This document shows, in pieces, positions 1,791 to 56,976 of a DNA stretch of 64,000 bases. The translations under genes were made by a program, and so were the position numbers. How positions within the stretch are numbered: position 1 is the stretch's first letter; each line of letters begins with the position of its first letter. This stretch comes from Ylistrum balloti (lineage: Eukaryota), in assembly GCF_031769215.1 (NCBI RefSeq), contig NW_026781869.1, positions 248,001 through 312,000 on the forward strand, written 5' to 3'. A model generated the notes under the pieces. The model had not been told where the DNA came from. It worked only from the letters and a program-made list of their open reading frames with translations, and did no database searches.

Positions 1791-2185
1791 TTGTTTTCTT
1801 CACTGTTGATAACAGAGACAACTACGATGTAAATACTTTGAATGGTGCATAACTAAAACGTTAAGAGAAGTACATGAAAAGTTGGTTCATTGTAGCAGCC
1901 GTTGTTTTGTTTTAGTTTCATATGAAGACATTCGATGCATGACTGATACACTAACATCATAAAACGCCTGAAATAATCCAGGTCGTCTTCCTGAGCAACC
2001 ATGTTATCGATACTTACTTAGAATTATCCAAATACAATAGGTACTGTAAAACGAGATGTTTTCAACTAATCATTGTTATGAAAACACCCTTTTATCTTGT
2101 TTTAACTCTAAGATTTCTGTCTAGTAACTGCTCTGTTTAGAGTTCGTTTTTCCAAACCCACAATAGAAGATTGTCGTGCCGGGCC

Positions 2186-2292
2186 GCTGACCTTGGTGAA
2201 CCGCACCTGTTGGTTCCCAGGCTGTCCAGTATATATACGTCATATACGAGGCACTTAATCAGAGTAGAGCTCGGGCGGACATCTACACAAAA
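2186..2292 (+). promoter_or_regulatory. Core promoter and non-coding exon 1 of the secreted polyprotein gene
   Basis: TATATATA at 2230-2237, an initiator-like atcaga about 28 nt downstream, and donor gtatgt at 2293. A TGACCTTG nuclear-receptor-type half-site lies just upstream (about 2188). The next acceptor (ataaatcag, ending 3047) precedes the ATG at 3057. Confidence 0.6.
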
Positions 2293-3056
2293 GTATGTAT
2301 TTGTTCAAATAACCAATTTATTTTCTACCAGGTTATTCAGGGAGATTTAGCCAAATCATTTATCTCTCTTAATCAGTTTCTAGTTAGTTTGTTACATAAC
2401 TTTACTGTAAGACTTTGTTAGAACATTCACATTAAATGAATTTTTAATCAAATTAGGATTTTGCATATGAAATAATTGCACGGGTGAACTTTTAAAAAAC
2501 AAAAATTCGGGTTGGTACATGATGTATTACAAACATCTTTTTCAGAATATCGTTCATTTCATTTTCGACAAAATGAAACTAGTTCCGAAATATTTTTATT
2601 AATAGTATTATATTGATACCTATATTTAAAGCCGTAAATATCCTCTAGGTTGTTAAGGACCTAAAATGTTATTATTTAAAACACAAAATAATTGAATATA
2701 TCGCCAAAGTGTTAGTAGCATCAACGGTAATTTGACGATTAGCGCTGTTACAAGGAAGATAACTCTAACTACACTACAATATGTTTCATGCATCTCCCAT
2801 GGACAGACACACTCTTAACCATTTCCATATTACTTAAAAATGACATTAAACTGTCTGTAGCCACAACTGTTGTCATACCATGAGAGTAAATATCGTTGTC
2901 CGTGTTCATCTTCCGTAACTGTATATGGGTAGTCCGGTCTTCTTTGTGTTTGTTTCCAAATTAATGTTTTATTTTGATCACACTGAGATCCTCCCTTGAC
3001 TTTCTTCAGAGTTCTTATATTGTACTGCGCTATCTCTCATAAATCAGATTTAGACC

Positions 3057-6000
3057 ATGAAGCTGTTCCTTCTTGCTTGCCTGTTGGCTGGGGCCAGCGC
3101 CGGATTCCTTGACTCGCTATCAGGAGCCTTAACCAGTGTGAAGGACGGACTTACGTCTGCAGCTTCCTCTACCCTGAGCACCCTCACTAGTGGAGACGTT
3201 GGTCAGATCATGTCCCACGTGGTTGTCCCAGGTAATGATGATCTTATATATATATATATATATATATATTTATAGCCATTAGGCCAGACCAACAACTTAC
3301 CATATACCGATACATTATGTTAAACTCACTCTATGTAGAAATCCGAACCAAGATAATAGAAAACGTAGTCAAAGCTTTATATTATAACTTTATGTATTAT
3401 TTGATATCCTAGGTTCCATAAGGCTTAGTGAAAGATTAAGCCACAATATAGAGATACATTTACATACTAAAGACTTTGATATAACAATCCACTAGTAGTG
3501 CAGTATCAAATCTTAACCTCGAAAACCATTGAAAATATTTACATTAAATTCAATATCTTTATTACACGCATTGATCTCGAAGTGTTAAATCATTTTGTTG
3601 TCAAATATATCTGCCCTCGATAGATTCCTTTAGTAGCATGATTGGTACTTTCTAATTACACACATCCTCAGTTGCCGAGCATGCCGCGCTCGCCGCCTTA
3701 TTGGGAAAACGTGAACACCCGTGAGTTACAATCTTGTTACTAACCTTTAACAGTTATTGAAATGCTTACGTCAGTTTTTCACTCCAGGAATAAGACAACA
3801 AAACTTTTACGACTTGGTGTTACTTAAAGTAAATCCATAACGACTCAAATGCAATAAGTGTGACGTAAATTCAGAATTGTTAGGCATGTTTTAAACGGTG
3901 TTAGTATTTAACATTGACTTATCTAAATCTATACTGTCACTTGTTTCTCATTTGTGAATATTTTGTGCTGTCTTTTCATTACAAAACCAGACAGGAACCC
4001 TCGGTCCAAGAAGTGATCAGCCACGGCGCTCAAGCCGTACAGCACGTACTCGACAAGTACGCCACCGAGCTGCAACATTTCCACGAGCAAATCGCTAGCC
4101 TTAATTACCTGAAAGGAGACCTCAACCAGTTCTTCGCTGACATGCAACATTCAAAGTGTATGTGTTATAAACAGGATTTAAGGAAAGCATACGTATTATC
4201 AGCGGTATTGAAAGCTAGTTCCCTACAAAATAAAAACATTCGCGGTATTTCAGAAATAGATGATGTCAATGATTTTTTACAGAATTGCGAGTGTTGTCTT
4301 AGTTTCGTTATCTTGTCTATAAATATTTGCTATTCATACAGTTGAAACGATGTTACTAAACTTCCTGTGTAATTTAATCATATATGAGACAAATGCGACG
4401 TTGGTGAAGTCAATGCGTTTGTTTATTACAGTGGTACACAATACTGCCTTGGACAACATCGTGACTAGTGTCCAGCAAGCTTTGTCCACCCACAAGAGAC
4501 AGACTGCAGACTCTGGACTCCTCTCAGGACTGTCTGGACTCTTTGGCTCAACTGTGGACAAGTTGAAGGAGGTGAGCTGAAGTCTTCAAAATGGAATTCT
4601 ATGATGACGTTTACCATTTCTTTTACCGGGATGGGACATCTTAGGATTCCTGTCTGTGTGACTATCTGTGTGTTTGTCTGTCTGTCCATCAGTCACAATA
4701 ATCCAACTTTTTTGTAATGCCGTCATGAACAGAGCAGATTTTTGGACATATGTTATAACAAGACACAGATCTGTTTTAAGTTTCAGTTCTTCATTGTATT
4801 GTTTTTTTGTACTTTTTTTACTTTCGTTTAGTTTAGACTTTGGTTTTGCCAAATTTTTCCCATTTTGTTTTGTTTGTTTATTCTTTCACATGTCTAAAGA
4901 CTATTCACTAAAATGTTATATATGTTTGGCTTATTACGGACATTCTTTGTGACACTAATGTCTTACTTGTTGCATATTGTTCCTGTCCGTATCACTCTCT
5001 TCAATGAATCAACTTTATTTCTTGTGGTATTTCGACCTTTGACCGCGGATGGGGTCTAGTTCGGGAATCAGAGATAAACTTACGGTGATTTTAACAGAAC
5101 ATCATTCATTTCGGTAATGCAAACCTAGTGAATGTATTTCATAGCTCATTTTGTTCCAACTGACTGAAACATTCACAAGATAAATCAATATTTTAAAAAT
5201 GTCTCAATGGAGATTTCGTTTCAAAGTCATCATTAGTATTATTTATAGTGAGATGTAAAGTAATGGCGCTAACATGCAGAAGAGCGAGTGCATTCAGCTA
5301 CTGCAGGCAAAGGGAGGCTTACAGGGCTCTGGTTCTTTGAACATAAAAAAAACAAGTCCTTTTCCATGTATTTGTGTGCGTGAAGGCTATCGACAATGAA
5401 CTAAACGCGACTTTGTGATGATGAATTTTCTATCAGGCTTTTTTTTTTTTTTTTTAATTGATTTTTTGTTATAGATTTGTGTGTTGCTGTTATATATATA
5501 TATTGTAAATTATTGCAGATTAAATTTAATCCTTACGTGATATCACTGCTCTGTCAAGTACCGATATAGGACTTTTCGGTGCTGTATTGAAACCTGTTAC
5601 AGAAAAATTCAAGTATATACATTTTTTCATCTTCAAGAAGTATACTAGCTTGCTGTGTGGAGGGGTGGGGTCGTAGTAATATATTTGTTTGATAGAAAAG
5701 TTGTCCTGTGTTGAATCAGAAAGACTTTTGTTTCGTTTTCAGTAAAGGAAACTGCGAAAAAGATCTCTGATATTCATGAATATGTGTCTATTAAGTCTAT
5801 TAAAAAGCCAAAACAGTTCACCAAACTATATATGTCATCGACATATATAAATTATTAATTTGTCGTTTACAATACATCAATACAAAAATAAAACATGCTT
5901 GCATGATCTAACTTGAACTTGAAACATTTCTCTTTATGGATTTTAACAAAAGGTTGTATGTCGGTATGACATCAATATTACCTGGTCCACACGGTTTCGG

Positions 6001-7462
6001 CACATCGTGTCACTATTGTTGGCAATATCTGAAATTCTCATGACGTTATTCTCACATAAAATTGACGTCAATGAATACTTCCTAAAAGCAACCCCAAAAT
6101 TATCTTTGATTAAGTGTATTAATCAGTATCTGGTCGCTTTCTCAAAGTCGTTTTATTTACAGTTCTGCCACATGCATATTGAAGTGACTATTTGTGGATC
6201 AATGATTACTCATGTCTGAACGATGTCTAGCAAAATCACGATATCAATTACTTTAACAATGTTTTTTCAGACGTATAACGGTATCCACGACACACTCTCA
6301 CAAGGATCAACAGGTATACTTGGAGCTTTGACCGGCCACATTTCTCATCTGACCGATTCCCTCAGCCATATAAAGGACACTGGCGCAGCCCTTCTGGCCA
6401 CTGGTCAGGAAACACTTGCAAATTTACAGAACTCTGCCAGCACACTCTTTAGTAAGTTACTAAGAAGGCGTCTCTGGTTTATCAAATGCCAATAACAATG
6501 AATATGCATTATTCAATAGGAATGAGATTTGATTAAGGTTTTATACATCAGACAGACAGCATGCAATAGTATCAATTCATTTTCTATCCGTATCAGGAAG
6601 TGGTTTCAAAACAAGACAACTGTTTCTGTTGTTAAACGTGCATCATTCAATATACTGAGATCTGGTATCAGTTTTGCTAGTAAGATGTTTACATGTCACT
6701 GTTGATTCAATATTCAAGGCCTTGTTCCTAATATCACTATTTCCTTGCATGATGTCGATAAATGACATACCAACTCGCTACACTGAATTTTGAAAGATGC
6801 ATGATGAAAACTATTATAGAAATGTCGTCATGTTGCTGCCATTATCGTTTGCGATATAAACGTGGACGTATTTGATGCTCGTTGATATTCCTAACGTATC
6901 TGTTGTTATTTGCATTGTTCATTTGATCACGTGACATTAACTACTTTGGTTGACCAAGATTTAGATGGCTTGTGAAGTCGATAAAGCAGAAGACTATTGC
7001 CAATCTGGAGCACCTATGATCTATACTCTCCTTGTTTATGGTCTCCGTGTGAATTATTCTTTCTTTCATATTTTGCTCTAGTTTTATCGAATTTGTGTAT
7101 GAGATAATTTTCTAAATTTTCGGTATTTTTTTTTTTTTTTTTGATGATGATTTTGACTGCCAACTTTACATATGTTCACTGTATGCATCGGTCAGCCAGC
7201 TCTCTACTTTATTATTATCATTTTAATGCCGTAGTACCTATCCGGGTAATGTAATTTGAGTATACTTACTGTAAAAATATCCTTATTGACCTTGGAGTGT
7301 CTGGTCACTGTTTATTTAATCTTTGTTGCAGTTATGTTATCTTACCGAACCTTAATGGTATATATTGTATGTTTACTTGCAGACCAGGCTCAGGCCGGCG
7401 TACAGGGCCAGGCATCCCAGGCCCTGGATACTCTGCTACATCCCGACCTCGGCAGCTCATAG
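3057..7462 (+). CDS. Secreted His-rich amphipathic-helical polypeptide precursor (263 aa) with G-KR and KR cleavage sites; function unknown
   Basis: Coding exons 3057-3231, 3672-3720, 3991-4157, 4432-4571, 6271-6451 and 7383-7462. All introns are GT-AG with compatible phases (1,2,1,0,1) and the total is 792 nt = 263 aa + stop. Protein: MKLFLLACLLAGASA (signal) / GFLDSLSGALTSVKDGLTSAASSTLSTLTSGDVGQIMSHVVVPVAEHAALAALL-G-KR / EHPQEPSVQEVISHGAQAVQHVLDKYATELQHFHEQIASLNYLKGDLNQFFADMQHSKLVHNTALDNIVTSVQQALSTH-KR / QTADSGLLSGLSGLFGSTVDKLKETYNGIHDTLSQGSTGILGALTGHISHLTDSLSHIKDTGAALLATGQETLANLQNSASTLFNQAQAGVQGQASQALDTLLHPDLGSS*. AATAAA at 7493-7498. The exons are GC-richer than the flanks. Confidence 0.88.
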
Positions 7463-8478
7463 ATTGTGACATATCTATGTATATATTTATCTAATAAAAT
7501 CATCGATGTCACCACACGGGCTTCATATTTCAATTGATTTTAATCATATTTTACGGACAGAATGTTCAGGTAGTTACACCATCTTACGTTCTTGTCATAT
7601 ATATTCCACAGTGTACCTATCAATATATCTAAAAAGGTATGACATTCTAGTATCCAAATACACATAACTAATAAAAAAAAGACTGTAAAAAATCAACCAA
7701 AACAGTCTCTACAAACAAATAAATACATAAAATAGTTCTATGTTTAAGGAGAACAAACGATGTTTTGAATGCGGATTTTTGTCAATTCTTCCGGGTCAGG
7801 AGTTCAGATACGATGGAAGGAATGGAAAACTGCTACACTATGAATGCCGAATATTACGAAGCGTTTAACAGTGTTAAAAAAATCTACATAAAAAAGCGTC
7901 TGAAGAGAACAGACTGAATATTTACACTGCTGCATTATCCGGAGAAAGTAACGATGTACACGTGATTGTTTTATTTTGTTTTATTGTGCACGTTGTTCAA
8001 CTATCCCCCATGTCCAACAAACCGCTTTGTCTTCTTTCGTGTTTCCTTTGTCGGAGAAAATGTCTTAAAGAAAAGAGTCAAGAAGTGTGTTTCAGTACAT
8101 GTATCTTGCGTCTCGCCGTTATACCAACACGAAACTTCTGCGGAGAGAGTACTTGTGTACAACGCAATGATGAAAATGCGTTTCTGCGAAGGAGGCTACT
8201 TTGCGGAGAGACAGTATCGGAGAGAAGAAGCCTGCCTTGATTAAATCTGAGACATCCCTTGTGCTACGCTGTGATCAAAGCCGTTGCAGAGACTCGGTTA
8301 CACTCAAACAACGAATTGAAATTTCACAACCGAGACTCAACAAGAGTAACCCACTCAACACTTGTATACATGAACGTCGGTAAAAGCGGACGATAAACCC
8401 TTTCCAACAAACGAAATAATCCAGCATTATAAATCATATATATAATTCATGACACGAACAGCTCTGGTAGCTGGGACA

Positions 8479-8660
8479 AAAACATCAAGAAAATACCAAC
8501 ATGACAACATTATTATAATTCAAACTCAAATTCCATAAACCTTGGTCAAAATATGAACAAAGAAATATTTACACGGAGACTCCTGGAAAGTACAGGAGAA
8601 ATAAGACCAGGTGTTCCGGAAAAGAAAGCATCTTTTGCTACATCGACGACACCCGCAATA
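8479..8660 (-). mobile_element. Dispersed Penelope-like element 3' tail, copy A
   Basis: The reverse complement reads gcgggtgtcgtcgatgtagcaaaagatgctttcttttccggaacacctggtcttatt...ttgtcatgttggtattttcttg. It matches copies at about 11620, 25805, 43205, 44431 and 52600. The tail segment aagaaaataccaacatg is repeated again at about 8825. Confidence 0.6.
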
Positions 8661-11617
8661 CAAATCTTGGTCAGTCCAAGTAAGTAAAGTCACACTCTCA
8701 AATGAGAACAAGGCATACAATAATGGAAGCAATAGGCAAACTAACGAGCATCAAATACGTCTAGATGGAAGATAGGGCACAATTTTGTATGATAACATAT
8801 CGCTGATAATAATAATAATAATGAAAAACAACAAGAAAATACCAACATGCCAACATATTAAAAAAAACTAGGACAAATGAACGTATCCTAGAAAAAAAGT
8901 TCCTATAAAAATTAAACTACAGGTAATTGATATTGAGATATCTTTTTCTATAGAAGCCATACCAGGAATGTTTGTATTATACCACATCAAGTGAAATGTG
9001 ACAGAAGTCACACAAGGAAATAACATCTTTTAGATAGAAATCTGGACAGAATTTACAATTCAAATACAAGAGTCGTCGGCTGTGAAATGCACAGAATTGC
9101 AAAAAAAGAGTTATAAATGTTCTATTGTGGATTATGGAAGTTGACCCATAATTCGATCGTTTTATAGAATAAAGATCACGCATGATTTCCAGGGAATGTT
9201 AAATGCGTTGTACACGTATATGTATATTTTTTGAAGCGCTGTCGCAATTCATGGAAAATATGTGTAGGAAACCTCGCGGAATTTAAGCACTACCGCAAAA
9301 ACCAAAGCACCTATCGATTTCAAACAATTTAAACTTTAAAATTTCCAATCGTCTTAAAGTCAAATTTTAGAAACAAATTTTATGTACTTAAGTGGAAGCT
9401 TAGATCCTGCGCTTCAGAATTTAAACATGAAGGACGAGTCCCAGAAGAAGAAACAGCTGTATGTTACAGTGTTTATTCATTGTATAGTTCTCATGTATCT
9501 CACTCTAAAGTTGTTTTCAAGTGTTAATCACTTCTGTGTATTTCGTGCAATCATTCCTAGAAGGTTACCATGGATGGTAGGGTTACTCGAAACCACTTTT
9601 AATTTGCCTGATTTTCAATCTGATACTATATTGAAGAGTACGATTACATCAGGAAAGTAATATGAATAAACAGTAATAACCGCCCAATACTTTTTGAGAA
9701 TTAAGTTTATTTGTTATCATGCTAGGTATTTGTAGAAATAGATCATTCTATTTCAGTTTCTTTGATCTCTTAGGGATCATGGATAACGATATCGGTGAAC
9801 TGAAATGGATTGCCCACTATAATTTGTCGGGAATGTGATAGCGAGGTTAGTATTCAAACATATATATGCATATATATAAAAGTTGTGTACCTGTTGTTTC
9901 TAGTGTACAATCGTGGCTGGCGCATCGATTTTCTTCTTAGCAACTTGTATTTTTTCATTGCTTCCCTTGACGTGCTCCATTTTTTGGCAATTTTTGAGCG
10001 TTTTCCGATGTCAGAAAGTTTATGGACTTTGTCTGCATGTCTCGAAACATCGGTCTTATATATGATTCTGCTGGGTGTGGCTTTTGGGCAAATCGTGTGA
10101 TAAGAAACAAACAAAAAGCATAATGAAAATACCAATGTATCAACATAATCATTATCTAAACTCAAATACGACGGCAAGCTATGAACAAACAAAAGATTTC
10201 CACAGGGAAATAAAAGTTTGAATCTACAATAATGGTTCGTAATTCTTCAAAGCTGTTATTTTAAATCAACAATTTGACAATGATTTGTCAGGTGTTGATA
10301 ATGGAGTTAATATATGTATTGGTATTTCAAAATATACGTAATTTGAAGACGGAAGTCATACTATTTTAGTATTGATAAGCCTTGCTCTTAAACATTGTAT
10401 TGTCCCTTTCCTGGCTGGCATTCCAAATGTTGGATAAGTCTAACGAAACAAAACATGTATTTACCAAACTTTACATTGTTTATACTGAGACAAAGACAGG
10501 TATAATTGAGATTAATGTCACAATAATGCATTATGATAGGTCAATAACGCTCGAAATCTGTTAACATTGTCTTGAATAACGTATCACATATCCTTATTTT
10601 TTTTCAAAACAGATGACACGATTTCTTGGAGTAGATATTAAAACGGGTGTCACTCTTAAAACGTTTGCTTGAGGACAATGTGATTATTTTTATTCTAAAT
10701 TTTGCATACAGAAAAAATAGTACATTACGCATTCCATTCAACTACATACAGTTTTATGTGGATAGGTGGTACCATATATGATAGTTCAGGACAGTAACTG
10801 TCATCTCAGAGGGATCTTGGTGTCTGTTGTCCTGTGATTTTCAATTGTTCACAATTGAGGTCGGTCTTAAGTTTTGTACACACATAGAGAAAAAAAAAGA
10901 TGCATGAAAAATAGTGTCTAGTATTTTTTTTAAATAATCATAGTACAAGGACATGCTTGTATGTGTTATTTTATTTAGAAACGCCAAGACTAGTTGGAAA
11001 ATAGTCATAACGACTTTTAGCCAACGGACATGTTGCTTTTCTATGGTCGTTCGACAATGCCAACTCGGAGCAGCATATGTTTCGAATCTCCAAACCAACA
11101 ATTTTGCGATTAAGTCGATGTGACGTTAGGTAGGACGCTCATCCTCATATTGAAATGAAAGGCATAAGCCGAGTGTCCAGCACATGTATGTTGTGTAGCC
11201 ACCAAGGAACTCCACGTCGTCGTTGTCGTCATTGATATCAACAGCAGATACGGTTAAACGCATTAATGGCATACCTATGACGCTGTGTATCGCAAGACGA
11301 ATGCCACTTGACAGTCGTGAGTAAATGCGTGTTTACGTCATATCATAATTTCCAGCATTTAATGTCAGTATTTTATACACAGATGAAACAACTTTCCTGT
11401 CGTGTTTTGAAACTTTAATACCTTATACGATACTTTAAAATGATAACAACACAACGACTGATCATTCCTATATATTTATCTGTGTTGCTGGAAAGTCTCC
11501 ATCGTCCTCGACATATTTAAAATCATGTATATATTTTGTCAAATTGTACATTTGAAGGCTACAAACCATATGCGTCACCAATCCATCTTTTGTTCTTAAC
11601 ACTACATTTTAACAAGG

Positions 11618-11940
11618 TTTACATGACGGCTGTCGTTGATGAAATCGATGAAACAATAGACGCCTACTTTTCCAGAACATCTGGTCTTATTCCCCTTGTA
11701 CTTGTTTAAGAGGTTATGTGCAGATCTTTCTTTTGTTCATCTATTGACCTAGTTTTATTGTATATGAGTTTGAATTATCACTATATTGTCATGTTGGTAT
11801 TTTCTTGGTTTTTCGTTTTGTTTTATTTTGTTTTTTTGTTTTTTTTTTTTTTTTTTTTGTTTTTTTGTGGTTTTTTTTTTTTTGTGTGTTTTTTATTTAT
11901 TTTTTTTATATATTTTTGTGTGTGTGATTTTTTTGTAATC
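11618..11940 (+). mobile_element. Dispersed Penelope-like element 3' tail, copy B, with T-rich tail
   Basis: tttacatgacggctgtcg...gacgcctacttttccagaacatctggtcttattccccttgtac...ttgtcatgttggtattttcttgg, followed by about 130 nt of T-rich sequence. Confidence 0.6.
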
Positions 11941-12239
11941 TAAGAATTGAAACAGTTGAATAATTCTTACTTCATAGTGTTGAAATATGTCTAGTTATTG
12001 TTTGTCTTTCACTGTTTGGTTACTTCATATTACCCATCCATAAATAACTGCTGTTAATATTACTTTCTTTTAGATACATTTCGTTATTGACATGAACAGT
12101 CTTATATAATCATTCTAATCCAATGCGTGTAACAGAGTGTGAAATATGTCTAGTTTCTATTTGTATGCTTTCCCAACAGTATTGGAATACTTTTGTGTGA
12201 TGATAGGCTTATTACTAGATAGACCTCCGATTCCATAGT

Positions 12240-13170
12240 TTGATAACATTCCAATTTACACGCTTTATCGATAATATAGAAAAACTTAGGTCAAATGATA
12301 TGCTATTTATATATGTACCAATTATACCTTAGGGTCCGTAGTTTTAATAAGCTTTCCTTTTACACATTATTACACAGTATAGGCATATATACCAAATAGA
12401 CCTCAGAGTACGTAGCTTTGATAGCATTTTAATTCAATGTCCATGGGAAATTATGATCACATTGTTTTAATGAAATGATAGAAAATTCCACTTTTTAGTG
12501 TATTTTCTTGCAACGTTTAGTAGACGTTGTAGACGTCTGAGACTATTGCTTATAAGTGAGATGTAGACAGCAAAACATGGGTTAGTGCAATTAATTGATG
12601 AAATTCAATTGCTTCTTTGATTTATAATGCGCTAATAAGATTGGATATAATTGTTGACAACAGCATTGCCGATGCCTTGATAAGAGCTAGACAATGTTCT
12701 GAAAAATGTTTCCTGTTACTCCAAGTAACAACAGCATTTATGCCTTTATTTTGCAAGGTATAAAACGCTTTTCATTCGCTATAGACATTACTTTTCTGTT
12801 CCATGTTTTTCATTAATGCATTCATGATCGTTAAAGGATGGCATCGTGAAACTTGTTTTTTATGAAATTCAGTATTTTGCTGTCATCCATGCAATTACAA
12901 ATAATTTTCTTTCTAAAATTTGTATAAGACATGAAGTAAGCTGAAAGACGGTAAGTATCCGATTTTATGTTGACTTTTATATATAGGAAATACAACTTTC
13001 CATTTTTCGGTATATTCTATTATATTATCAACAGTTTCTCGCCACGCCTCGTTTGTTATGTAATCGATTCATGAACATTTATTTAGTCATACTTGTCGTA
13101 TACATACATTGGTCATATAAACTGATGAATCTGTTCTCTCGAGATGTCTGTATAAAGCTGTTCGAAGAAG
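12240..13170 (+). pseudogene. Possibly a very degenerate Penelope-like RT remnant
   Basis: Short motif echoes only: FQFTRFIDNI (about 12250, cf. FRYIDD) and NFPFF (about 12995, cf. VNFPFL). Heavily decayed. Confidence 0.22.
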
Positions 13171-14799
13171 TATGTTGAAGTGCCTGCAATCCCAATAGGA
13201 TACTTCCTATCGAGAAACATGTTGTTTTAGCCTTACGTTTTGTCCATATATGCACTGATTTGCACCATACAGAGCCTGTTTTCGTTTATTGACGAACCTT
13301 GGCCCCTGTCCGTAATTGCAGATTTCTGGTCTTGATGGTTCTTGATCAATACCACCGAGTCAAACCGTTCTGCGTTATTCCACTTTTGAACTACGACGGA
13401 TTTAATGCCATATTTGTACGGTTGCATGAATCCCGTCATATCGTCGACCGAAGATTTCATTACTGGTTCTGATAGGCAACCAGATAGTACTGTATAAACA
13501 AGACATACCCTATATTCAAAGTGTTAATTGTCTTCGTTAAACCGTCATCCCTTCCTTTAGTCTAGCATCAATGAATTAGCTATGGCAAGTATGGGAGTCC
13601 TTACTTTTTTTCGCGCAATGTCGCGTCCGTTGGGGATGTTGTTGTTATTTTTCATTGGCTACGTAATACCCCCTCGGAAAATTAACTGCTTTATATCTTG
13701 TGAGATCCTTTTTTATACGAATATCTTCCAATAATTTCAACACTTGAACGACATTCGTTTTTGTCACTTTGTTTCAAAGACGGTTAAAATATTTCTGAAA
13801 TTAAGAATGTCTTTGTTGCCGACTTCAGTAAATTTATTCGCAAATATTCAACGCTTACGTCCAATTCGTTGACGTTTCCCGATAATAAGGCTTGTACTTG
13901 TGAGCAGCTGTCAAATCTGACTAAACCCTACCATTGCTACATACGTGTTCAATTTCAATATCCGAGTATAAAAAACCCTATCTTGTTGCAATCTTTTCCA
14001 TAATTGACCTAAGTCTAGGACTTTTAATTTTCCTTAGTGTACGTTTACCCCTAAGACAACGGCAGTGTCCCTGACCCGATCCAATACACTATTTCTCTAC
14101 AAGTTAATGACCCTCGGACCTCTCACAAATTTGGGTTTATATATTACCCTCAAGGGGAATGTCTTATCTAGTTTTTTTCAAATGAATCCGTGTTATAAGA
14201 CGGGCTTTGTGACGGGAAATCCGTAGGGGTTGGAGAGCTAACTGACACTAAGGGTAGGGCTTTTAGCTGGGCTTTGGTACAGCTGATTATCGCTCAATGA
14301 ATATAACACACAAAACACTTACATGATCGTTTTATAGTATACAGCCATAAATTCTTCAGTGGTGTATGGATTACCGATATGATGTACAAAATATATCACC
14401 TTGACTTTAACGGCAAATGTAGCATCTTTTGTATGAATCGAAATGTTGAAGCATCAGCGAAAGGTACACGGTGATGGAAGGGCTCGGTCATGGTGCGTAG
14501 TGCTTTTTGATCGTTATTAATGATCCAGGAGCTGAGTTTGAGCATAGACTGAAAGTAGGAAATGTACCTATTCAGGAACGGACGATACTATGATGTTTCC
14601 CGCCTCCATGGACCATCTTCAAAATAAATATGATACGTTTAAACGAATCATAAGATTATTAGATATTATAATTTATATATCTTAGTGAAAAATAGCTTCC
14701 GTAGGTATTTAGTACCTTTTACACAGGTATCATCTTTACAAATAATCTAAAAGACGATAATGGAGTATGTTACTCGTGTGAAACGGGTAAGAGAACACT

Positions 14800-15640
14800 C
14801 AACTCGTTAGTAGGTATGTGGTATAATAGACTAGATTCTTTAACAAGTAAGGCTATTTTAACGTCTGTTATTACGTCAGAAATCCTATATGGATGTAGAA
14901 TAAGTATACTAATAAGGCACAAGACCAAGTCAATGTTACATCAAGATACACCTGCAGAAAATGTGTTGGTGTCTCACAAAGATCACCCACCACGGTTACC
15001 TTGCAGTGTATGGGTTTGAATCTATGGAGTGAAGTAGAAGGCATGATTTTTTGGCATAAACGATATTCTTCGTCAGTCTTTGCTGCTTTCTAGCTGGTAA
15101 CAGGTTGAAAAGGGAAAATGGTTTTTATACCAGACGTTTATCAAAAAATGGAGAAATTTAACTATGTTTTTTCAAAGAACAAATCACAGACACCGCTTTA
15201 TACCTGAAGAGTTCATAGAAAAGGTTCTGAAAAACTGTTTTGAAGCTGTTTTGACGAATTGGTATTATGATGAATTGAAACAAGATCTCTCTTCCAAAAC
15301 AAATGCTACAGTGGGTCCTAATCCCGTCCTGACTTTATGTCAGAAAATCCTCTAGATATAGCTGGAAACTTGATGAGGTAGTAATACTATGGATGAAAAC
15401 TGAAGCTGAAGGGGTTATTTGTACACTTTGTAGAAAGTTGAGCACTGATATCATTTCTTACCTACTGATCGAGTGTCATGTGCATTACCTTACGCGTGAT
15501 TCCTTCTTTGATAACATTGTTAATGTAGTAAATATCAGAGACTATGTGAGATTTCGTCTCTTAAAGAGAATCCTTAATCAGGTTTTCTGTTGGTCAGCTG
15601 TACTCGCGTTGATTTGTCTGACGAGAAGTGGTAGACTTTA
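14800..15640 (+). mobile_element. Degenerate non-LTR retrotransposon (LINE) ORF2 3' fragment
   Basis: Fragments read LTSKAILTSVITSEILYGC (post-RT LYG motif), RFIPEEFIEKVLK, and ICTLCRKLSTDIISYLLIECHVHYLTRDSFFDNIVN. The last matches the C-terminal CxxC-x8-H-x4-C knuckle position with the His substituted. Frameshifts and stops are present. Confidence 0.7.
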
Positions 15641-16649
15641 AGGTTTGTTGTTGCTGATGGAGTTGAGATGATACTCTCCACTATGAACTCACGGCTTGAA
15701 CTGATTGTGTCATGACTTATGAATGATATTGAAGTTTTATGTGCGGAATCTGTAACTAGCATTGAATTATGCATTTTTCAATGTTGTTTGAGATATCTTT
15801 ACAGAGGAAATAAAGAATGTTTGTCATTGTTTTTATTGTTTTTATCAAGTGGCAGGTCAACCTCACGTCCACCATGTTGAAGTACATCTGGTTTATCTAT
15901 AACGTTTCACAAGGACAAAGCTGGATTAACATTCACAAAATATATGTGTGAATATAAGATGAATATCAAGGGTTTTTCAACCTTTTATTAAAGATAACCT
16001 TTGTACCTTGGTAGCAACAAATGTGTAAACCAGTGTTAATTTTAATTCAACTTACATCGCTTTCAGCATCTGTACTTCTCCAGTAGTTCCCTTAATAATA
16101 TTCATAATATAGACCGAATGTCAGTGTGTTTTTGCACCTCTCCTGGTAATTATTGCATTTGCTTAGGGAGGGGGCAAGTTACTTTGAACAGCCATGTTTT
16201 ACTGGCCTTTGACGGATCTATTTATTATCTATCACACTGAAACGTCATGCCTGTACAAAGTACCAAGACACCTCAACTGGTCTACATCGCCTCTATTACT
16301 GATCACCATGCTTTATATGTTATGGCTAGGGGACAACATTTCCTCCTATATGGGCGCACGATTTACATCAAAGGTCAAAAGTAAAGTAGTGCCAAGAGAA
16401 ACATAAAGGAGATCAGCTGTCTTTGAAAAGAGAGGAAACAAAAATATATCACGTTTAGTCACCTTTTTACAATGACTGCATTACAGTATGTGGGCAAAAG
16501 GTGCAAATCATGCGTGTTAATTATAGGATTGAATTACGCCCACACCATACTCTCTTTTGAGGCACCTACAACGCTACCAAATAAGCGATATTGATTGTAC
16601 TACCTTTACTTATGTACATTTGACCTAAGATAACTGTTGACCCGGATGA

Positions 16650-16732
16650 AACATAACATATACAGAACACGTGCTATCAAAGTGCTTTAATTGCGCATAT
16701 TTTCAACTGAACAAGCACAAGAGTGTCTACAG
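16650..16732 (+). promoter_or_regulatory. Probable non-coding first exon of the second peptide precursor gene
   Basis: Ends in gtctacag|gtgagt (donor at 16733), about 450 nt before the acceptor tttgtttaag (17178-17179) that precedes the ATG at 17192. No canonical TATA is seen, so the 5' boundary is approximate. Confidence 0.5.
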
Positions 16733-17191
16733 GTGAGTTTATACATTACCTAGTTTTTTTCGAATATACTTCTGTAATTCCGAATTTGACTGGATAATGA
16801 TATAGTATACATCATCCAAATTTTGGGTTTGGTTTAACACTGCAGTTTGGTAATGATAAGACGTAGTCTGAACACTCGATAGACATGAACCCAAGAGATA
16901 GTACGTCTTGTTTCACGGTGTCACTGTTAATGCTGTCTTAGTCGGTTCCTTATCAATGCTATCATCGCCTCATCTGATTTAAGATAACGACGCAGACAGC
17001 AAATATTCTATTTTCTAAAAACACATGTAAGGTTTCATGATTAAGGTTAAATCTATATGAAATCAATCATTCTTACTATAGCCAGGCTATCGATAAACCA
17101 TCACGGACAAAAATAGCGTTTGGGTGTGCTATTTATATCATCATAAATTTTAATCATACATAACGTCAATTTGTTTAAGTTCGTAATTGCG

Positions 17192-19174
17192 ATGAAGAAC
17201 GGTAAAACTAGTGCCATTCTGCTACTAGTATTTATTATCCATGAGACTGTATGCCTGTCATTGCTCCATGGACACATGAAATCACAGGAAGCACTGGCGA
17301 TCAGACCAACATCAGAGTTGGAGCATTTGGAGGCAATCATCGGCGGGGAATTGGAGAGTGAGTCAATTCGATAGTCAGAAACTAACATAGCCAACCCTCA
17401 AATACAAACTGAAGATCTAGAGGAGGGTGCTCCTTAGTTTGTATACTAGTCACTTCGGGAATATCCATGCTGTGTTTTGAAATTTACAAAGGTTTAGATC
17501 GAACAGTAAAACGGATATTTGCGATATAATGATCTCGATAAACATGGCAGTGCTATCCTTATTTTGATCGTATAGATTTAAACAACAATGTTGTTAGAGC
17601 GTCTATTAGTTGATAATTCCAAAATATGGGTCACTTTAATCTGGATTCTTGACCCCACTAATGTCACATTTTCAGTGGCGTAATTGACAGTCGTCACTCA
17701 GGCTGGATGATATGCATATGATAATTTTGCGGACGGACAATTTTCCATAGTAATAATATCGTAAATTGCTTCCATTGGCCAATCAAATACCATGTTACGT
17801 CGCAAATGAAGTAGAAGGGTGTTACAAAAAGTACAGTACATGTTTGAATATAATTGTAGAATAAAGTACTGTATACACGATAGCTGATTAACTGATATTA
17901 GTGGCGTAATTTGAGGCAATCCTGAAGGCAATAGGAAAGCCTATTCGGCTGTAAAAACTGTTTGTAAAGTATGATAAAGCCTTAGATATCCAATAAGTTT
18001 AGAGGAACATCACGAGGGTATGTATATTCTGAGATATAATGGTGTTTATGATACTGTATCACATATATCTTGTAAATGTACATTATGTAGTAAGTAAACA
18101 GGTATATAATGCGCGTTTATTGAATGATACACTTTCTGTACGTAGGACGAATCTAACGTGCTCCATTCTTAGACGCGATAGAGCCCATTCTATTTAGTAA
18201 GGCATTCACACATAGTTATCATAAAATGATATCTGATTTTAGATACGCCCATACATGTATTCCTAGGCAACAACTCACATTTAATCTAAAAAAGATGAAA
18301 AAGTAGGGACCAAATTCATGTCATTTTGCAATTTGGTAGATAAATAATTCCAATATGTATATTTCAGTCTGACAAAACTATACACAATGAGAAAGCAATG
18401 CGTTCTTATGGTGATCATTCGGGACATATTTGAGATACATGTAAGGTGTGGCAGTGGTTGTTTTCTTAAAATCTTTCTCGGCGTAAATATCTTTACACTT
18501 TAACGTATTTGGATTCTCAAAAAAAAAAAAAAAAAAAATACAAACCCCGAAGCAGCAATGAAAGGAATCGGTATACTAGAATAATAACTATTTAGGAAAA
18601 TTATGATAAGATTGTTGGCATCTTAAAGAGTTTGATTAATTGTACTGCAGAAAATGGGTAAGGATTAAAGTATAAATATCACCCCCATCGCAGCGTAGGA
18701 ATTTGAAGAGTGCAAATGAAGTGAAAATATTTCTTGTGCGATATAGCAACAAGAAGGTACTATTGACATTCGACAGATGAGATCCTTTGTGCCCCTCATA
18801 TATATAGATATACGCATCATTTTTTTATTTATTAATTTGAAGGTCTCATCCCTGAAGGACTAACGGACGCTCTTGGTCACATTATCGGCAGACGAGTAGA
18901 GGTAGGTAATGACTTAATACAGTATTGTTGTATCATGTCTCAAATATTATCATCATTGCTTTTGACATATTCTTGTTATCCCGTGTTTTTTAATTATCTA
19001 TATGTAAATGCTATTGATTTGCATATGTTTAGAATAATTGACTTTTACAGTTTTAATTTCTTTCTTTCTTTTTTTTTTTTTTTTTTTTTGCCCATGACGA
19101 ATAGCTTATTTTGTTTACTTTCAGGCAACACACAGATTGTAAATCCAAGTTCCAGGAAGACGTTGTCTGTTTAA
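17192..19174 (+). CDS. Secreted His/Glu-rich amidated peptide precursor (80 or 92 aa) with a G-RR site; function unknown
   Basis: Exons 17192-17357 (donor gtgagt, phase 1), 18843-18901 (donor gtaggt) or 18843-18905 (donor gtaatg), and last exon from 19125 (acceptor ttttgtttactttcag). Protein: MKNGKTSAILLLVFIIHETVC (signal-like) LSLLHGHMKSQEALAIRPTSELEHLEAIIGGELESLIPEGLTDALGHII-G-RR-VE, then ATHRL* (stop ends 19142) or VGNTQIVNPSSRKTLSV* (stop ends 19174). AATAAA at 19205-19210. Confidence 0.72.
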
Positions 19175-19766
19175 CCGAGTGCTGTCTCCTGAATCATGTT
19201 TGTAAATAAACATAATTAAAGGCATTGTCACAGGAACCTAGGTTCGTGATTGCGAATGATTTAGTGTCCTCTTGACAGCAAGGGTTATATGAAGCCTGTA
19301 GTTCAAGAGGCCAAAGATTGAACGAAAATAAGTGTTGTAAGCGGCATAGGCGTATCATTCATATAGTTTTGATGTTTCTCTGGAGGAAGACTCCAAGGAA
19401 ATATTTCGAAGGGTAGGATATGAAATGCAGTGGAATACAGCAAATCGTATGGTTAATAAAATATGTTGCTCGCAACTGAGCGAGATCGGGACATCTCACT
19501 CGAGGGCTTGGATCCTTTAACACAATCCAAACCGTGGGCGTTAGCCGAGATTAGGATGTTACAGGATATGATTAAAGAAACAGAATATCTTTGATATTTT
19601 AACTACTACATTACCTATGTTTTTGTCGTCGAAATGCACAGATGTAAGTGCCACCTTCGCCTACACGCGGATGAATACACCAATGCTTACAAAATTCCGC
19701 GAAAGCGCACGTAAAGATACTAAATAGATCGGGCGCGATAGAAAAGTATAGGATGGGGTATTACGT

Positions 19767-22689: not shown

Positions 22690-23455
22690 TGAGTTACTGA
22701 ATATGCCTATTACTATTGTACATAGAATTGACAGGAATTTCTATGAACGCAGGAGGTAGCATATGGTGAAAATCCGGACCGACCCAAAAGTTTAACAGCA
22801 CGGGACGGAAGGAAAGTCGACAGACAAATACATTTTGCCAACAGTTGGAAATAATTTTATCAGGCGAAATGGAAACCTGGTGCAATGAAAAACTCTTCTA
22901 CACGGAGGAGCACTGTTGAGTCAAATTCTGATTGAAAAGGAGTTTGTGTTTGGTGGAAAACGTATATCATTCTGGGTGCATTTCTCCAAGAGTTGAAGAT
23001 AAAAAGCTACGCCTGTAATCTTGGGATGCATCACGAAGCAAGATGCGGTGACACTTACTCATGTTAATAGGAACATTAATTCGGGAAATGTGTTGAACTT
23101 TTACAGCAATAAAATAATTGCTAGACATAATGCGGATAATGATTACATGTTTTAAGACGATAGTACTCCTGTTCATCGCTCTGGGTTCACGAAGACATTT
23201 TTGGAACCAAACGAAATAGACCCAATGAGCTGGCCTACATAATGTTCCGACTTTAACATTATAGAAAACTTATGGTTGATAATTAAAAGGGAAATTGAAC
23301 AGTCAGTTGACAGAAAAGAAATACTGAGCAATTTTATCAAAAACAAATTCTTTTTGGACGAGTTTGAGGTTGAAATTTTCCAAAACCTGCATCGGTCGAT
23401 TCCAAAAAGGATCTCTGCTGTAAGAAAGTCTCGAGAATACGTAATGAAATATTAG
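22690..23455 (+). mobile_element. Degenerate Tc1-family transposase pseudogene
   Basis: Motif remnants in order: NPDRPKSLTARDGR (cf. GRPRK), GGKRISFWVHFS (cf. GGGSVMVWGCFS), F*DDSTPVHRS (cf. FQQDNAPCH), WPT*CSDFNIIENLWLIIKR (cf. WPAQSPDLNPIENLW), and QNLHRSIPKRISAVRKSREYVMKY* (typical Tc1 C-terminus). It has an internal deletion, stops and frameshifts. Confidence 0.88.
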
Positions 23456-46934: not shown

Positions 46935-47504
46935 ATGATGCGATTCATAGCACTGTTGACTCTACTCGTGGAGACTTGCCTGGCTTTCCCGCCATTCAGC
47001 CGCGGATCATACACACTCAAAGTGAGCGGTGAACGCAATGGATATGACGCAGACGCAACGCCAAGTACGGATCACACAAATTCTCTTAGTCTCGGTGACG
47101 TTATGATGCAGACCCTTGCCAACCAAGGGACAAATGTTGTGGTAAGTGACAGGTACGAGTATACTACAAACCCTTCCGAGGGTGACTGGGACGTGTTCCG
47201 GGCTGGGCTGGTCTCCCCACCCTCGGGCCTCCTACAACAGTGTTTGTCTCTTTCATCAACAGGCATGCAACAGCTGTTATACTGCATCAAACTATTATCG
47301 AATAAAGATCAACTTCATCAGTCAAATGTTCAATCAAAAAGAGGCCCGCTTAAGCTTAACCCAACAGGATGGAAGAGAAAAAAGAGGAGTACAAACGATG
47401 ACATGCAGAGAGAATTAGAAAATATAAGGATTCAGTCCATGTTGAATCAGTTACTTGAAAAACGCCAAAATGCCAATCCTCGATTTAACCCGACAGGCTG
47501 GTAA
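46935..47504 (+). CDS. Neuropeptide/peptide-hormone-like precursor (189 aa) yielding GPLKLNPTGW and QNANPRFNPTGW; family unassigned
   Basis: Single coding exon after acceptor tttttattacag (46931-46932). It has a signal peptide MMRFIALLTLLVETCLA, KR-GPLKLNPTGW-KRKKR, a spacer STNDDMQRELENIRIQSMLNQLLE, and KR-QNANPRFNPTGW-stop. The two peptides share NPTGW, and there is one Cys pair in the pro-region. Confidence 0.88.
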   Translation: MMRFIALLTLLVETCLAFPPFSRGSYTLKVSGERNGYDADATPSTDHTNSLSLGDVMMQTLANQGTNVVVSDRYEYTTNPSEGDWDVFRAGLVSPPSGLLQQCLSLSSTGMQQLLYCIKLLSNKDQLHQSNVQSKRGPLKLNPTGWKRKKRSTNDDMQRELENIRIQSMLNQLLEKRQNANPRFNPTGW

Positions 47505-55407: not shown

Positions 55408-56976
55408 AATGCTAGGCCTGGAAATATCAATCAATTAAGCTATAGTAATTAAAATGATAAGTTTCCATTTACGTAAAATCACAGGAAATAGATTTTTTAA
55501 AGGTAAACCTAATTGGTACAAAGAAGGAATTCAAGCATTCACATAAATCTGCGGAGTTTATTCCGGAAAAAGCTGTGCTATCTTTTAATGTATTATTTTT
55601 GAGAACGTAACACAGTAATAATGATGTACTATGCAAGGTTTGCCAGAATTTCATTAAACACAAGTCGAGAATGTTTGAATAAGACATGGAATATTAAAAA
55701 TAACTGTTGCGCTGAGTATAATTACATGTCTATGTACACAAAGACAATATCATCCGATTATTAAATCAGCTTCATGCCAAATTTCCGGACCATATTAATG
55801 AAATACAAATCATTTCCAGGAAATGTTGTATTAATAATCTGGATAAAAAGGCGACAGTAAAAGCTGTTATCACGAAGTAATTGTGTAAGAGATATCGCCT
55901 CTCACGACAGATTGTAGGCAACTCAAAGCTACTGATTTCATTTTCAAAATTTAGATCTGTACAAAACGCACGCCGAAAAAAAATTATACATGCAATTAAC
56001 ATCTACAAGTATTTTGTCATATATATCTTGAATAGTATCTTGATTTCAGAACTGTAAAGTGTGGCTAAGTGCCTAATGTTTTGCGTGAAACATACATATG
56101 AATGAACAATACTTCATCGTGACGTAATATAGCCAATTGATCTGCGATCAAAAACAAGACCTTATCTGTAACGCTTTGGATTTCAGTGTTATCGGCCAAG
56201 ATTGGAAAACTTATGCATGTGGTTTATCGAGACGGAAGTATGTGCACAAGATATACATAAATGATACGTGATCTCCATAATAAGTTCATATACATAATGA
56301 CGTGTCTACGTCCTGCTTAAACATTGACAGAATAGCAATCATCGGCTTAACAATATATATAAAAATCTTCTTTTCTCTAGCAAATATCTTTTTTTTTTTT
56401 TTTGGTTAAAAATGCGAGTATTGAAAATCCGTGCATGGCATTAAGTATCCATATGTTGAAATGTATGAAGTATATATATGTATAAAACACAGTCCATTTT
56501 CTGCGTTAAACATTTGACATTTAAACCCACTAGTCAATACAATAACAATCGTGCACAGTATGGTTACTACATCGATATCAAAATGCCAATGCTAACGTCA
56601 TGTTGTCCTGTTTAGAATAAGTAATGATTTTACTGTCAATATCCGCGCCTAATTTTACAAATTGTATAAATACAAATGGATTTCAGTATATCACTCATCT
56701 ATTGATAAATTTCGTCGGTATTTTTTTTACTGGGCGGAAACCATGTTCGTGGTTAGATCAAAAGACCGAAGCAGAAAAAATGTTTTTAATCATGGAATAT
56801 AAAATCGTACTTTTTGTAAAATACTATAAGAATATCAAACTGTTGAAAATCTAAACTACTATGAAAACCGATTTTCTATAATATAAAATCACAGGAGAAA
56901 CACTTGTCGTAATCCTGTATATTTAAACCTGTAACACTCATTATGTAAGTTAAAGAAATAAACAAAACAGAAAAAA

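What the first reader, a model, noticed from the sequence alone, without database searches (positions are those of the whole stretch)
2230..19210. Candidate unrecognised gene family: two clustered precursors of amidated, His-rich amphipathic peptides
Seen in the sequence: both genes are on the same strand. Each has a short non-coding exon 1, an ATG about 10 nt into exon 2, a signal peptide, and a phase-1 intron after 58 vs 55 codons. Each then has a short exon 3 (49 vs 59-63 nt) carrying Gly + dibasic. The first mature peptides are similar in length (54 and 49 aa) and their C-termini align: VVV-P-VAEHA-AL-AA-LL-GKR vs SLI-P-EGLTD-AL-GH-II-GRR. Pro sits exactly 12 residues from the predicted amide in both. 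Gene 2 LTDALGHI also echoes LTDSLSHI in gene 1 peptide 3. Established: G-K/R-R is the convertase/carboxypeptidase/PAM amidation signal. Inference: these are divergent paralogues of a secreted, Cys-free, neutral-to-acidic helical peptide system (membrane-active, pH-gated defence, or lipid/metal binding) that standard ORF calling misses. I cannot name a family for either gene.
Basis: partly seen in the sequence, partly recalled or inferred. Interest (0 to 1): 0.85.

Follow-up and report, generated by a model that had tools for sequence, protein, structure and literature searches.

The report
Orphan helical secreted protein plus neighbour
The first gene is a real, conserved but unnamed bivalve gene for a secreted, cysteine-free protein built of long amphipathic helices. 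The second is an unconfirmed small gene with no detectable kinship to it, so the proposed two-member family of amidated peptides does not hold up.

Summary
Gene 1 (3057-7462, six coding exons, 263 aa) is a sound model. All splice sites are canonical. Exons 6 and 7 recur in three unrelated public contigs at 38-54% identity, one with the same intron position and phase. In a second individual, only 2 of 40 listed differences fall in coding sequence, and both are synonymous. The mature protein has no Cys, 15 His and net negative charge. It shows a strong helical hydrophobic period of 3.66 residues. AlphaFold2 models each of two exon pieces as one long confident helix. No Pfam, PDB or AlphaFold DB cluster relative was found.

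I read gene 1 as a lineage-restricted secreted amphipathic-helix protein that resembles exchangeable apolipoproteins. Cleavage at its two K-R sites, one preceded by Gly, is possible but unproven.

Gene 2 (17192-19142, 80 aa) rests only on ab initio signals: good splice sites, AATAAA and a codon score in the top 3.5%. It has no homologue, no helical periodicity and no RNA evidence.

Similarity between the two genes is at chance level (p about 0.3), so paralogy is not supported. The scan noted both genes separately before on this same window. Interest is modest.

The parts
2230..2237 (+). Gene 1 TATA-like box (TATATATA)
   Evidence: Sequence. Function is inferred.
2262..2292 (+). Gene 1 putative non-coding exon 1. 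The start is approximate. The donor is AAAA|GTATGT after 2292.
   Evidence: Sequence only. No RNA evidence.
3057..3231 (+). Gene 1 coding part of exon 2. It holds the ATG, a 15-aa signal peptide (..AGASA|GF) and the first 43 mature residues. The intron that follows is phase 1. The exon begins at 3010 or 3048.
3672..3720 (+). Gene 1 exon 3 (49 nt), encoding VAEHAALAALL-GKR-EHP. The intron that follows is phase 2.
   Evidence: AG|..|GTGAGT
3991..4157 (+). Gene 1 exon 4 (167 nt). AlphaFold2 models it as one long helix.
   Evidence: the frame requires the donor GTATGT after 4157; helix over residues 5-54, pLDDT 95.6.
4432..4571 (+). Gene 1 exon 5, carrying H-K-R-Q, the second dibasic site. Two synonymous SNPs lie at 4514 and 4526.
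6271..6451 (+). Gene 1 exon 6, the conserved core of the family (..LLATGQExLAxL..).
   Evidence: P0001, P0002, P0004; helix 2-59, pLDDT 86.9.
7383..7462 (+). Gene 1 exon 7 up to the TAG stop. A homologue lies in L001 behind an intron at the same position and phase.
7493..7498 (+). Gene 1 AATAAA, 31 nt after the stop.
16700..16732 (+). Gene 2 putative non-coding exon 1. The start is unknown and no TATA-like box lies upstream. The donor is CTACAG|GTGAGT.
   Evidence: sequence only
17192..17357 (+). Gene 2 coding part of exon 2 (the exon starts at 17180). It holds the ATG, a signal-peptide-like N-terminus and 55 codons. The intron that follows is phase 1.
   Evidence: codon score 0.193, top 3.5% of null ORFs; no homologue.
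18843..18901 (+). Gene 2 exon 3 (59 nt), encoding SLIPEGLTDALGHII-GRR-VE. An alternative donor lies 4 nt further on.
   Evidence: ab initio only
19125..19142 (+). Gene 2 last coding piece (ATHRL, then the stop). AATAAA lies at 19205-19210.

Best explanation
The region holds two unrelated genes, not a two-member family.

Gene 1 encodes one 263-aa secreted protein: a 15-aa signal peptide and a 248-aa mature chain. The mature chain has no Cys, 15 His, 22 Asp/Glu and 11 Lys/Arg. It is made of long amphipathic alpha-helices, roughly one per exon, whose large hydrophobic residues recur every 3.66 residues. That is the 11/3 spacing of lipid-surface-binding helices such as exchangeable apolipoproteins.

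Gene 1 belongs to a small, unnamed, lineage-restricted family whose best-conserved part is exon 6. I infer that it acts outside the cell as a soluble helical bundle or rod. It would present or open a hydrophobic face to lipid, membrane or another hydrophobic surface, and its histidines would make that behaviour sensitive to pH or metal. Its only two Arg residues sit in K-R pairs, in what look like linkers between helices. Convertase cleavage, with amidation of Leu69, is therefore possible as a secondary step but is not shown.

Gene 2 is a plausible but unverified ab initio model of an 80-aa secreted precursor of one very acidic 49-aa peptide.

Shown: the gene 1 model, its conservation, selective constraint, helicity and lack of named relatives. 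Inferred: the function, the processing, and whether gene 2 is real.
For: Gene 1 model:
- Six coding exons, all AG|..|GT, give 792 nt in frame, followed by a stop and AATAAA.

Conservation:
- The exon 6 piece finds P0001 and P0002 (E 1e-8 and 5e-8, 53-57% identity) among 1.84 billion representatives.
- A profile search adds P0004.
- L001 also carries exon 7 (62% identity) behind an intron at the same codon and phase.

Constraint:
- In a DNA-like run of another individual, 2 of 40 listed differences lie in coding sequence against 8 expected (P = 0.008). Both are synonymous.

Helicity:
- The periodicity peak is at 3.66 residues with power 3.08. None of 500 shuffles reached it (their maxima averaged 1.22 +/- 0.26).
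- AlphaFold2 gives one helix for the exon 4 piece (pLDDT 95.6) and one for the exon 6 piece (pLDDT 86.9).

No named family:
- Pfam, PDB, Atlas and AlphaFold DB clusters give nothing significant.

Not paralogues:
- Searches show chance-level similarity between the two genes.

Gene 2:
- Strong splice signals and AATAAA.
- The codon score is best in the proposed frame and in the top 3.5% of 85 null ORFs.
Against: - No RNA evidence exists for either gene. The single run offered had flat depth and no joints.
- The full-length protein could not be folded, so a bundle or rod is inferred only from two exon pieces and the periodicity.
- Exon-wise Pfam scans did not match apolipoprotein models.
- Both Arg residues lie in K-R pairs, which is unlikely by chance (shuffle P = 0.0012, a post hoc test). 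One pair follows Gly and the other precedes Gln. That pattern fits a prohormone better than a plain structural protein.
- The histidines are not conserved in the most distant homologue, P0004.
- Gene 2 has no homologue and no TATA-like box.
Confidence: 0.55

Rival explanations
1. Gene 1 is a true polyprotein or prohormone. Prohormone convertases cut after K71-R72 and K153-R154 in a regulated secretory cell. Carboxypeptidase and PAM then convert ..LL-G to ..LL-amide. The products are three long anionic helical peptides of 54, 80 and 109 residues, and the third may begin with pyroglutamate. A related possibility is a granin-like, pH-sensitive granule matrix protein.
For: - Both Arg residues of the mature chain are in K-R pairs (P = 0.0012 by shuffling).
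- Gly precedes the first pair and Gln follows the second.
- The sites lie outside the two modelled helices and next to Pro- or Gly-rich stretches.
- The first residues after the signal peptide (GFLDSLSGALTSVKD) resemble GLLSGLSGLFGSTVD, which starts five residues after the second K-R.
- The chain is acidic and Cys-free, like granins (my own knowledge).
Against: - There are only two dibasic sites in 248 residues. Having at least two is not itself unusual (P = 0.067).
- The products would be far longer than usual neuropeptides.
- Neither site has Arg at P4, so constitutive furin cleavage is not expected (established consensus R-x-[KR]-R). Cleavage would need a neuroendocrine-type cell, and expression is unknown.
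- The best internal repeat of at least 15 residues apart scores 30, and 18% of shuffles reach it. The GFLD/GLLS pair scores 29, one point lower.
- The best-conserved block lies in the middle of the third peptide, not next to a cleavage site.
- Gene 1 is not found in the text or held supplements of the scallop ganglion neuropeptide survey, PMC5996578.
Confidence: 0.3
2. Genes 1 and 2 are very diverged tandem paralogues. They would keep only gene architecture and a C-terminal P-x5-AL-x2-[LI][LI]-G-[KR]-R module.
For: - Both lie on the same strand about 10 kb apart.
- Both have a possible non-coding first exon.
- Both have a phase-1 intron after 58 or 55 codons.
- Both have a short third exon carrying Gly plus a dibasic pair.
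Against: - The local alignment is at chance level (p 0.30-0.38), and tblastn gives E = 8.7 for the 8-mer.
- The signal peptides are unrelated.
- The second intron phases differ (2 versus 0).
- Gene 1 is amphipathic-helical and the gene 2 peptide is not.
- Phase-1 introns after signal-peptide exons are common (my own knowledge).
- Gene 2's exon 3 was found by looking for Gly plus a dibasic pair, so that shared feature is partly built in.
Confidence: 0.1
3. Gene 2 is not a gene. On this reading it is a chance ORF with a hydrophobic start, sitting in transposon-rich intergenic DNA and joined by eye to chance splice-like sites.
For: - No homologue in two searches.
- No TATA-like box.
- 85 other ATG ORFs of at least 50 codons exist in the window.
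- A 97-aa antisense ORF overlaps exon 2.
- No helical periodicity or other structural signal.
Against: - The donors after the putative exon 1 and after exon 2 are GTGAGT and the donor after exon 3 is GTAGGT. Both coding-exon acceptors follow pyrimidine-rich tracts, and AATAAA lies 63 nt after the stop.
- The codon score is highest in the proposed frame and in the top 3.5% of null ORFs.
- The exons are not repeats within the window.
Confidence: 0.35

Closest known systems
Exchangeable apolipoproteins (insect apolipophorin-III, Pfam PF07464; vertebrate ApoA1/A4/E, PF01442)
   Same: These are also secreted, Cys-free or Cys-poor, and rich in Ala, Leu, Gln and Ser. They are built of long amphipathic helices with 11/3 hydrophobic spacing. 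Gene 1 shows a period of 3.66 residues and long confident helices.
   Different: There is no sequence match in exon-wise Pfam scans or in PDB sequence searches. Gene 1 is His-rich and poor in Lys and Arg, unlike these Lys/Glu-rich proteins. It also carries two K-R sites. The bundle fold and lipid binding were not tested. To my knowledge no molluscan apolipophorin-III is described.
Prohormone or neuropeptide precursors with Gly-Lys-Arg amidation signals, and granins
   Same: Gene 1 has a signal peptide and dibasic sites, with Gly before the first and Gln after the second. Its chain is acidic and Cys-free.
   Different: There are only two sites. The products would be 54-109 residues long. There is no repeated short peptide and no match to the scallop neuropeptide list in PMC5996578. 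Processing is not shown.
His-rich amidated helical host-defence peptides (for example tunicate clavanins; recalled from memory)
   Same: These share His content, predicted helicity and a possible C-terminal amide.
   Different: Those peptides are about 23 residues long and cationic. The peptides predicted here are 49-109 residues long with net charge -3 to -6.
BPIFA1/PLUNC, a Leu-rich secreted surfactant-like protein
   Same: The weak top-ranked PDB profile hits include BPIFA1. The shared feature is a G/L-rich stretch (GxLGxL).
   Different: The E-value of 0.3 is not significant. BPI-fold proteins contain beta-sheet and a conserved disulfide, whereas gene 1 is Cys-free and predicted helical.

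Membership tests
Amidated-peptide prohormone | N-terminal signal peptide | tested here: met
   By the -3/-1 rule read on the sequence: AGASA|GF in gene 1 and ETVC|LS in gene 2. No dedicated predictor was available.
Amidated-peptide prohormone | Dibasic cleavage sites flanking the peptides, with Gly before the site for amidation | tested here: inconclusive
   Gene 1 has G-K-R and H-K-R. Both Arg residues lie in K-R pairs (P = 0.0012), but having at least two dibasic sites is not unusual (P = 0.067). Gene 2 has one G-R-R and no upstream site.
Amidated-peptide prohormone | Cleavage sites conserved in homologues | not testable with these tools
   No homologue of exon 5 was found. Exon 3 is too short to search. 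The homologous contigs hold only exons 6-7.
Amidated-peptide prohormone | Processed amidated peptides detected, with expression in regulated-secretion cells | not testable with these tools
   The only run offered was DNA-like. No peptidomics data were available.
Exchangeable apolipoprotein / apolipophorin-III | Sequence match to PF07464 or PF01442 | tested here: not met
   Exon-wise hmmscan at E up to 10 gave only chance hits, for example ApoO at E = 0.15. The full-length protein could not be submitted.
Exchangeable apolipoprotein / apolipophorin-III | Long amphipathic helices with about 3.67-residue hydrophobic period | tested here: met
   The peak is at 3.66 residues and none of 500 shuffles reach it. 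AlphaFold2 gives a single helix for each of two exon pieces.
Exchangeable apolipoprotein / apolipophorin-III | Up-and-down helix bundle that opens on lipid | not testable with these tools
   The spliced 263-aa protein has no reference, so it could not be folded.
Cationic alpha-helical antimicrobial peptides | Net positive charge and a strong hydrophobic moment | tested here: not met
   Net charges are -3, -5 and -6 for gene 1 and -6 for gene 2. The hydrophobic moment is 0.1-0.25 in gene 2.
   Shuffle p is 0.30-0.38. The tblastn E-value is 8.7. The anchored 15-mer has p = 0.017.
   The first coding intron is phase 1 in both, after 58 and 55 codons. The next intron is phase 2 in gene 1 and phase 0 in gene 2.
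Gene 1 family (unnamed; window exon 6, P0001, P0002, P0004) | Conserved exon 6 block ..LLA[TQ]GQE[TG]LA.L.. with the phase-1 intron behind it | tested here: met

The most novel reading that the evidence does not exclude
Gene 1 may found an undescribed molluscan family of secreted, His-bearing, Cys-free 11/3-helix proteins. These would work like exchangeable apolipoproteins or pH-switched surface binders. They would also be cut at conserved K-R linkers into long anionic helical peptides, the first of them amidated. That would be a hybrid of an apolipoprotein-like scaffold and a prohormone.
Probability: 0.2. Interest if true: 0.55.

Novelty: new member of a known kind. Interest (0 to 1): 0.3.

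Why it matters
Bivalve genomes hold many lineage-restricted secreted proteins of unknown role. Gene 1 is a clean example: it is conserved, under constraint, confidently helical and absent from every family library searched.

If it binds lipid or hydrophobic surfaces, it would be a candidate for the exchangeable-apolipoprotein role, which to my knowledge has no described molluscan counterpart. If it is instead processed, it would add an unusual class of long anionic amidated peptides.

The negative result matters too. Shared gene architecture plus a Gly-dibasic motif is not enough to call two genes paralogues, and the second gene still needs transcript evidence before anyone builds on it.

Tried and rejected
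RNA evidence:
- The look-up of sequencing runs gave a single run. When laid on 2100-7700 it had flat depth of about 11 across introns and no joints, so it is DNA-like.
- It therefore gave no splice evidence.

Homologue searches that found nothing:
- Gene 2 exon 2 against the 5.8-billion-protein collection and JGI metagenome contigs.
- Gene 1 exon 6 profile against JGI metagenome contigs.
- Gene 1 exon 5, in its stop-free context.
- No full-length relative of gene 1 exists in the 1.84-billion-representative library. It holds only ORF fragments from genomic contigs.

Family and fold libraries:
- Pfam by exon, PDB sequences, ESM Atlas features and AlphaFold DB clusters with the exon 6 helix gave nothing significant.
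- I rejected the BPIFA1 hit (E = 0.3) as a G/L-rich composition effect.

Literature:
- Six peptide fragments searched as text gave no paper.
- Accession numbers of the homologous contigs led only to plume-metagenome papers.
- The scallop neuropeptide survey lacks both peptides.
- A search for scallop, His-rich and helical terms gave only general antimicrobial-peptide reviews.

Other checks:
- The best internal repeat of at least 15 residues apart in gene 1 (score 30) is not significant (p = 0.18).
- No further paralogue lies in the window.

Not done:
- I did not fold or search the full-length spliced proteins.
Full report
What is there

The window is AT-rich eukaryotic DNA (about 35% G+C). Earlier follow-up notes of this scan call the genome a scallop-like bivalve. 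I did not check that independently.

For gene 1 these are:
- TATATATA at 2230.
- A possible non-coding exon 1 ending at 2292.
- ATG at 3057.
- Coding exons 3057-3231, 3672-3720, 3991-4157, 4432-4571, 6271-6451 and 7383-7462, each bounded by AG and GT.

Together they make 792 nt in frame, or 263 codons, ending in TAG, with AATAAA 31 nt later. The frame requires the GTATGT donor after 4157. A cut one base earlier breaks the frame. Intron phases are 1, 2, 1, 0, 1.

Gene 2 has ATG at 17192 and coding pieces 17192-17357, 18843-18901 and 19125-19142. It encodes 80 aa, with intron phases 1 and 0 and AATAAA at 19205.

Is gene 1 real?

Yes, on three independent lines.

1. Conservation.
   - The 60-aa exon 6 piece was searched against 1.84 billion representative proteins. 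It found two ORF fragments, P0001 and P0002 (E 1e-8 and 5e-8, 53-57% identity).
   - A profile search added P0004 at 45% identity by BLASTP and 38% by tblastn.
   - All three are prokaryote-style ORF calls on short eukaryotic genomic contigs: an ENA metagenome scaffold, a Logan contig and a hydrothermal-plume metagenome.
   - L001 also holds the exon 7 homologue, ending in ..LDTILHP.. and a stop. Its intron sits at the same codon and phase, with ..A|gtaagt and ..cag|AC...

2. Constraint within the species.
   - Run X1 is another individual's DNA, with about 1.3% differences, flat depth and no joints.
   - Of its 40 listed differences between 2224 and 4762, only two fall in coding sequence against eight expected (binomial P = 0.008).
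   - Both are synonymous third-position changes: TCT>TCC and TCA>TCT.

3. Codon usage fits the other ORFs of the window.

What gene 1 encodes

- The mature 248-aa chain has no Cys, 15 His, 36 Leu, 29 Ser, 26 Ala, 22 Gly, 22 Asp/Glu, 9 Lys and 2 Arg.
- Large hydrophobic residues autocorrelate at lags 3, 4, 7, 8, 11 and 18.
- Their power spectrum peaks at 3.66 residues with power 3.08. None of 500 shuffles reached it; their maxima averaged 1.22 +/- 0.26.
- The C-terminal 109 residues peak at 3.65 and the middle 80 at 3.55.
- AlphaFold2 models the exon 4 piece, as a single sequence, as one helix over residues 5-54 at pLDDT 95.6. It models the exon 6 piece, with three aligned sequences, as one helix over residues 2-59 at pLDDT 86.9.

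The protein is therefore a set of long amphipathic helices, about one per exon.

Nothing names it. Pfam by exon, PDB sequences, ESM Atlas and AlphaFold DB clusters all give chance-level output.

I could not fold or search the whole spliced protein. It has no reference, and long typed strings are not to be sent.

Protein or precursor?

- The only two Arg residues of the mature chain both follow Lys (G-K-R-E and H-K-R-Q). Shuffling gives P = 0.0012 for that, although the test is post hoc. The plainer statistic, at least two dibasic pairs, gives P = 0.067.
- The sites lie next to Pro- or Gly-rich stretches and outside the two modelled helices.
- Gly precedes the first site and Gln follows the second.

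Against it:
- There are only two sites in 248 residues.
- The products would be 54, 80 and 109 residues long.
- There is no Arg at P4 for constitutive furin cleavage.
- The family's conserved block lies in the middle of the third "peptide".
- The best internal repeat at least 15 residues apart is not significant (p = 0.18).
- The scallop ganglion neuropeptide survey does not contain it (PMC5996578).
- Conservation of the sites could not be tested. No homologue of exon 5 was found, and the homologous contigs stop at exon 6.

I therefore prefer an apolipoprotein-like secreted helical protein, with optional cleavage. I keep the prohormone or granin-like reading as a serious rival at about 0.3.

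A classical membrane-active defence peptide is unlikely, because the net charges are -3, -5 and -6. The histidines are kept in P0001, partly in P0002 and not in P0004. "His-rich" is thus a feature of this species' copy rather than of the family.

Gene 2

Evidence for it is ab initio only:
- A signal-peptide-like start.
- GTGAGT and GTAGGT donors.
- Pyrimidine-rich acceptors.
- AATAAA 63 nt after the stop.
- A codon-usage score of 0.193 that is highest in the proposed frame and in the top 3.5% of 85 null ATG ORFs.
- Exons that are not repeats within the window.

Evidence against it:
- No homologue.
- No TATA-like box.
- An overlapping 97-aa antisense ORF.
- Surroundings with transposon remnants.
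- No helical periodicity (best period 4.07, p = 0.07).
- Low hydrophobic moments.

The predicted 49-aa peptide has net charge -6. I put the chance that gene 2 is real as modelled at about 0.6-0.65.

Are the two genes paralogues?

The evidence does not show it.
- The best local alignment is the 8-mer LTD[SA]L[SG]HI (score 32). Shuffles reach that score in 30-38% of trials, and tblastn gives E = 8.7.
Its score of 10 is reached by 1.7% of all 15-mer pairs between the two proteins. Seven other windows of gene 1 fit gene 2's C-terminus as well or better.
- The signal peptides share only M-K.
- The second intron phases differ.
- One product is amphipathic-helical and the other is not.
- The shared phase-1 intron after a signal-peptide exon is a common arrangement.
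- The shared Gly-plus-dibasic exon is partly an effect of how gene 2's exon 3 was picked.
- No further copy of either gene lies in the window.

Verdict

- "Unrecognised family" holds for gene 1 alone.
- [quoted passage not shown] is not supported.
- Gene 1 is an orphan-type secreted helical protein. Such genes are common in bivalve genomes, and annotation pipelines that use RNA-seq would probably already list it as uncharacterised.
- Interest is modest.

Noticed in passing
window 46935-47504 (+): An intronless 189-aa ORF with a signal-peptide-like start. It carries two copies of ..NPTGW, one followed by KRKKR and one at the C-terminus after EKR. It has no Pfam match. It looks like a small peptide precursor, and the scan already noted it (s1-268586).
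   Followed up: partly
window 53905-55434 (-): A single 509-aa ORF with F420_oxidored (E = 2e-18) and Ferric_reduct domains. This is a STEAP-type metalloreductase that appears to be intronless.
   Followed up: partly
window 6588-7148 (intron 6 of gene 1) and 8520-8761: Contig word depth in run X1 rises to 64 and 148 against a background of about 11. In addition, 6865-7102 matches 8520-8761 in inverted orientation at 72% identity. This points to a dispersed repeat inside the intron and downstream of the gene.
   Followed up: no
window 22700-23452 (+): A decayed Tc1/mariner-type transposase remnant. It gives a weak DDE_3 match (E = 0.014) and has an in-frame stop.
   Followed up: partly
P0003 (672 aa): A weak hit (E = 7e-4) made of a roughly 50-aa unit repeated many times. 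I judged it a composition or repeat artefact with no relation to gene 1.
   Followed up: no
window 3238-3281: A (TA)n microsatellite lies directly behind the donor of gene 1 intron 2. The reads tool skipped it as a repeat.
   Followed up: no
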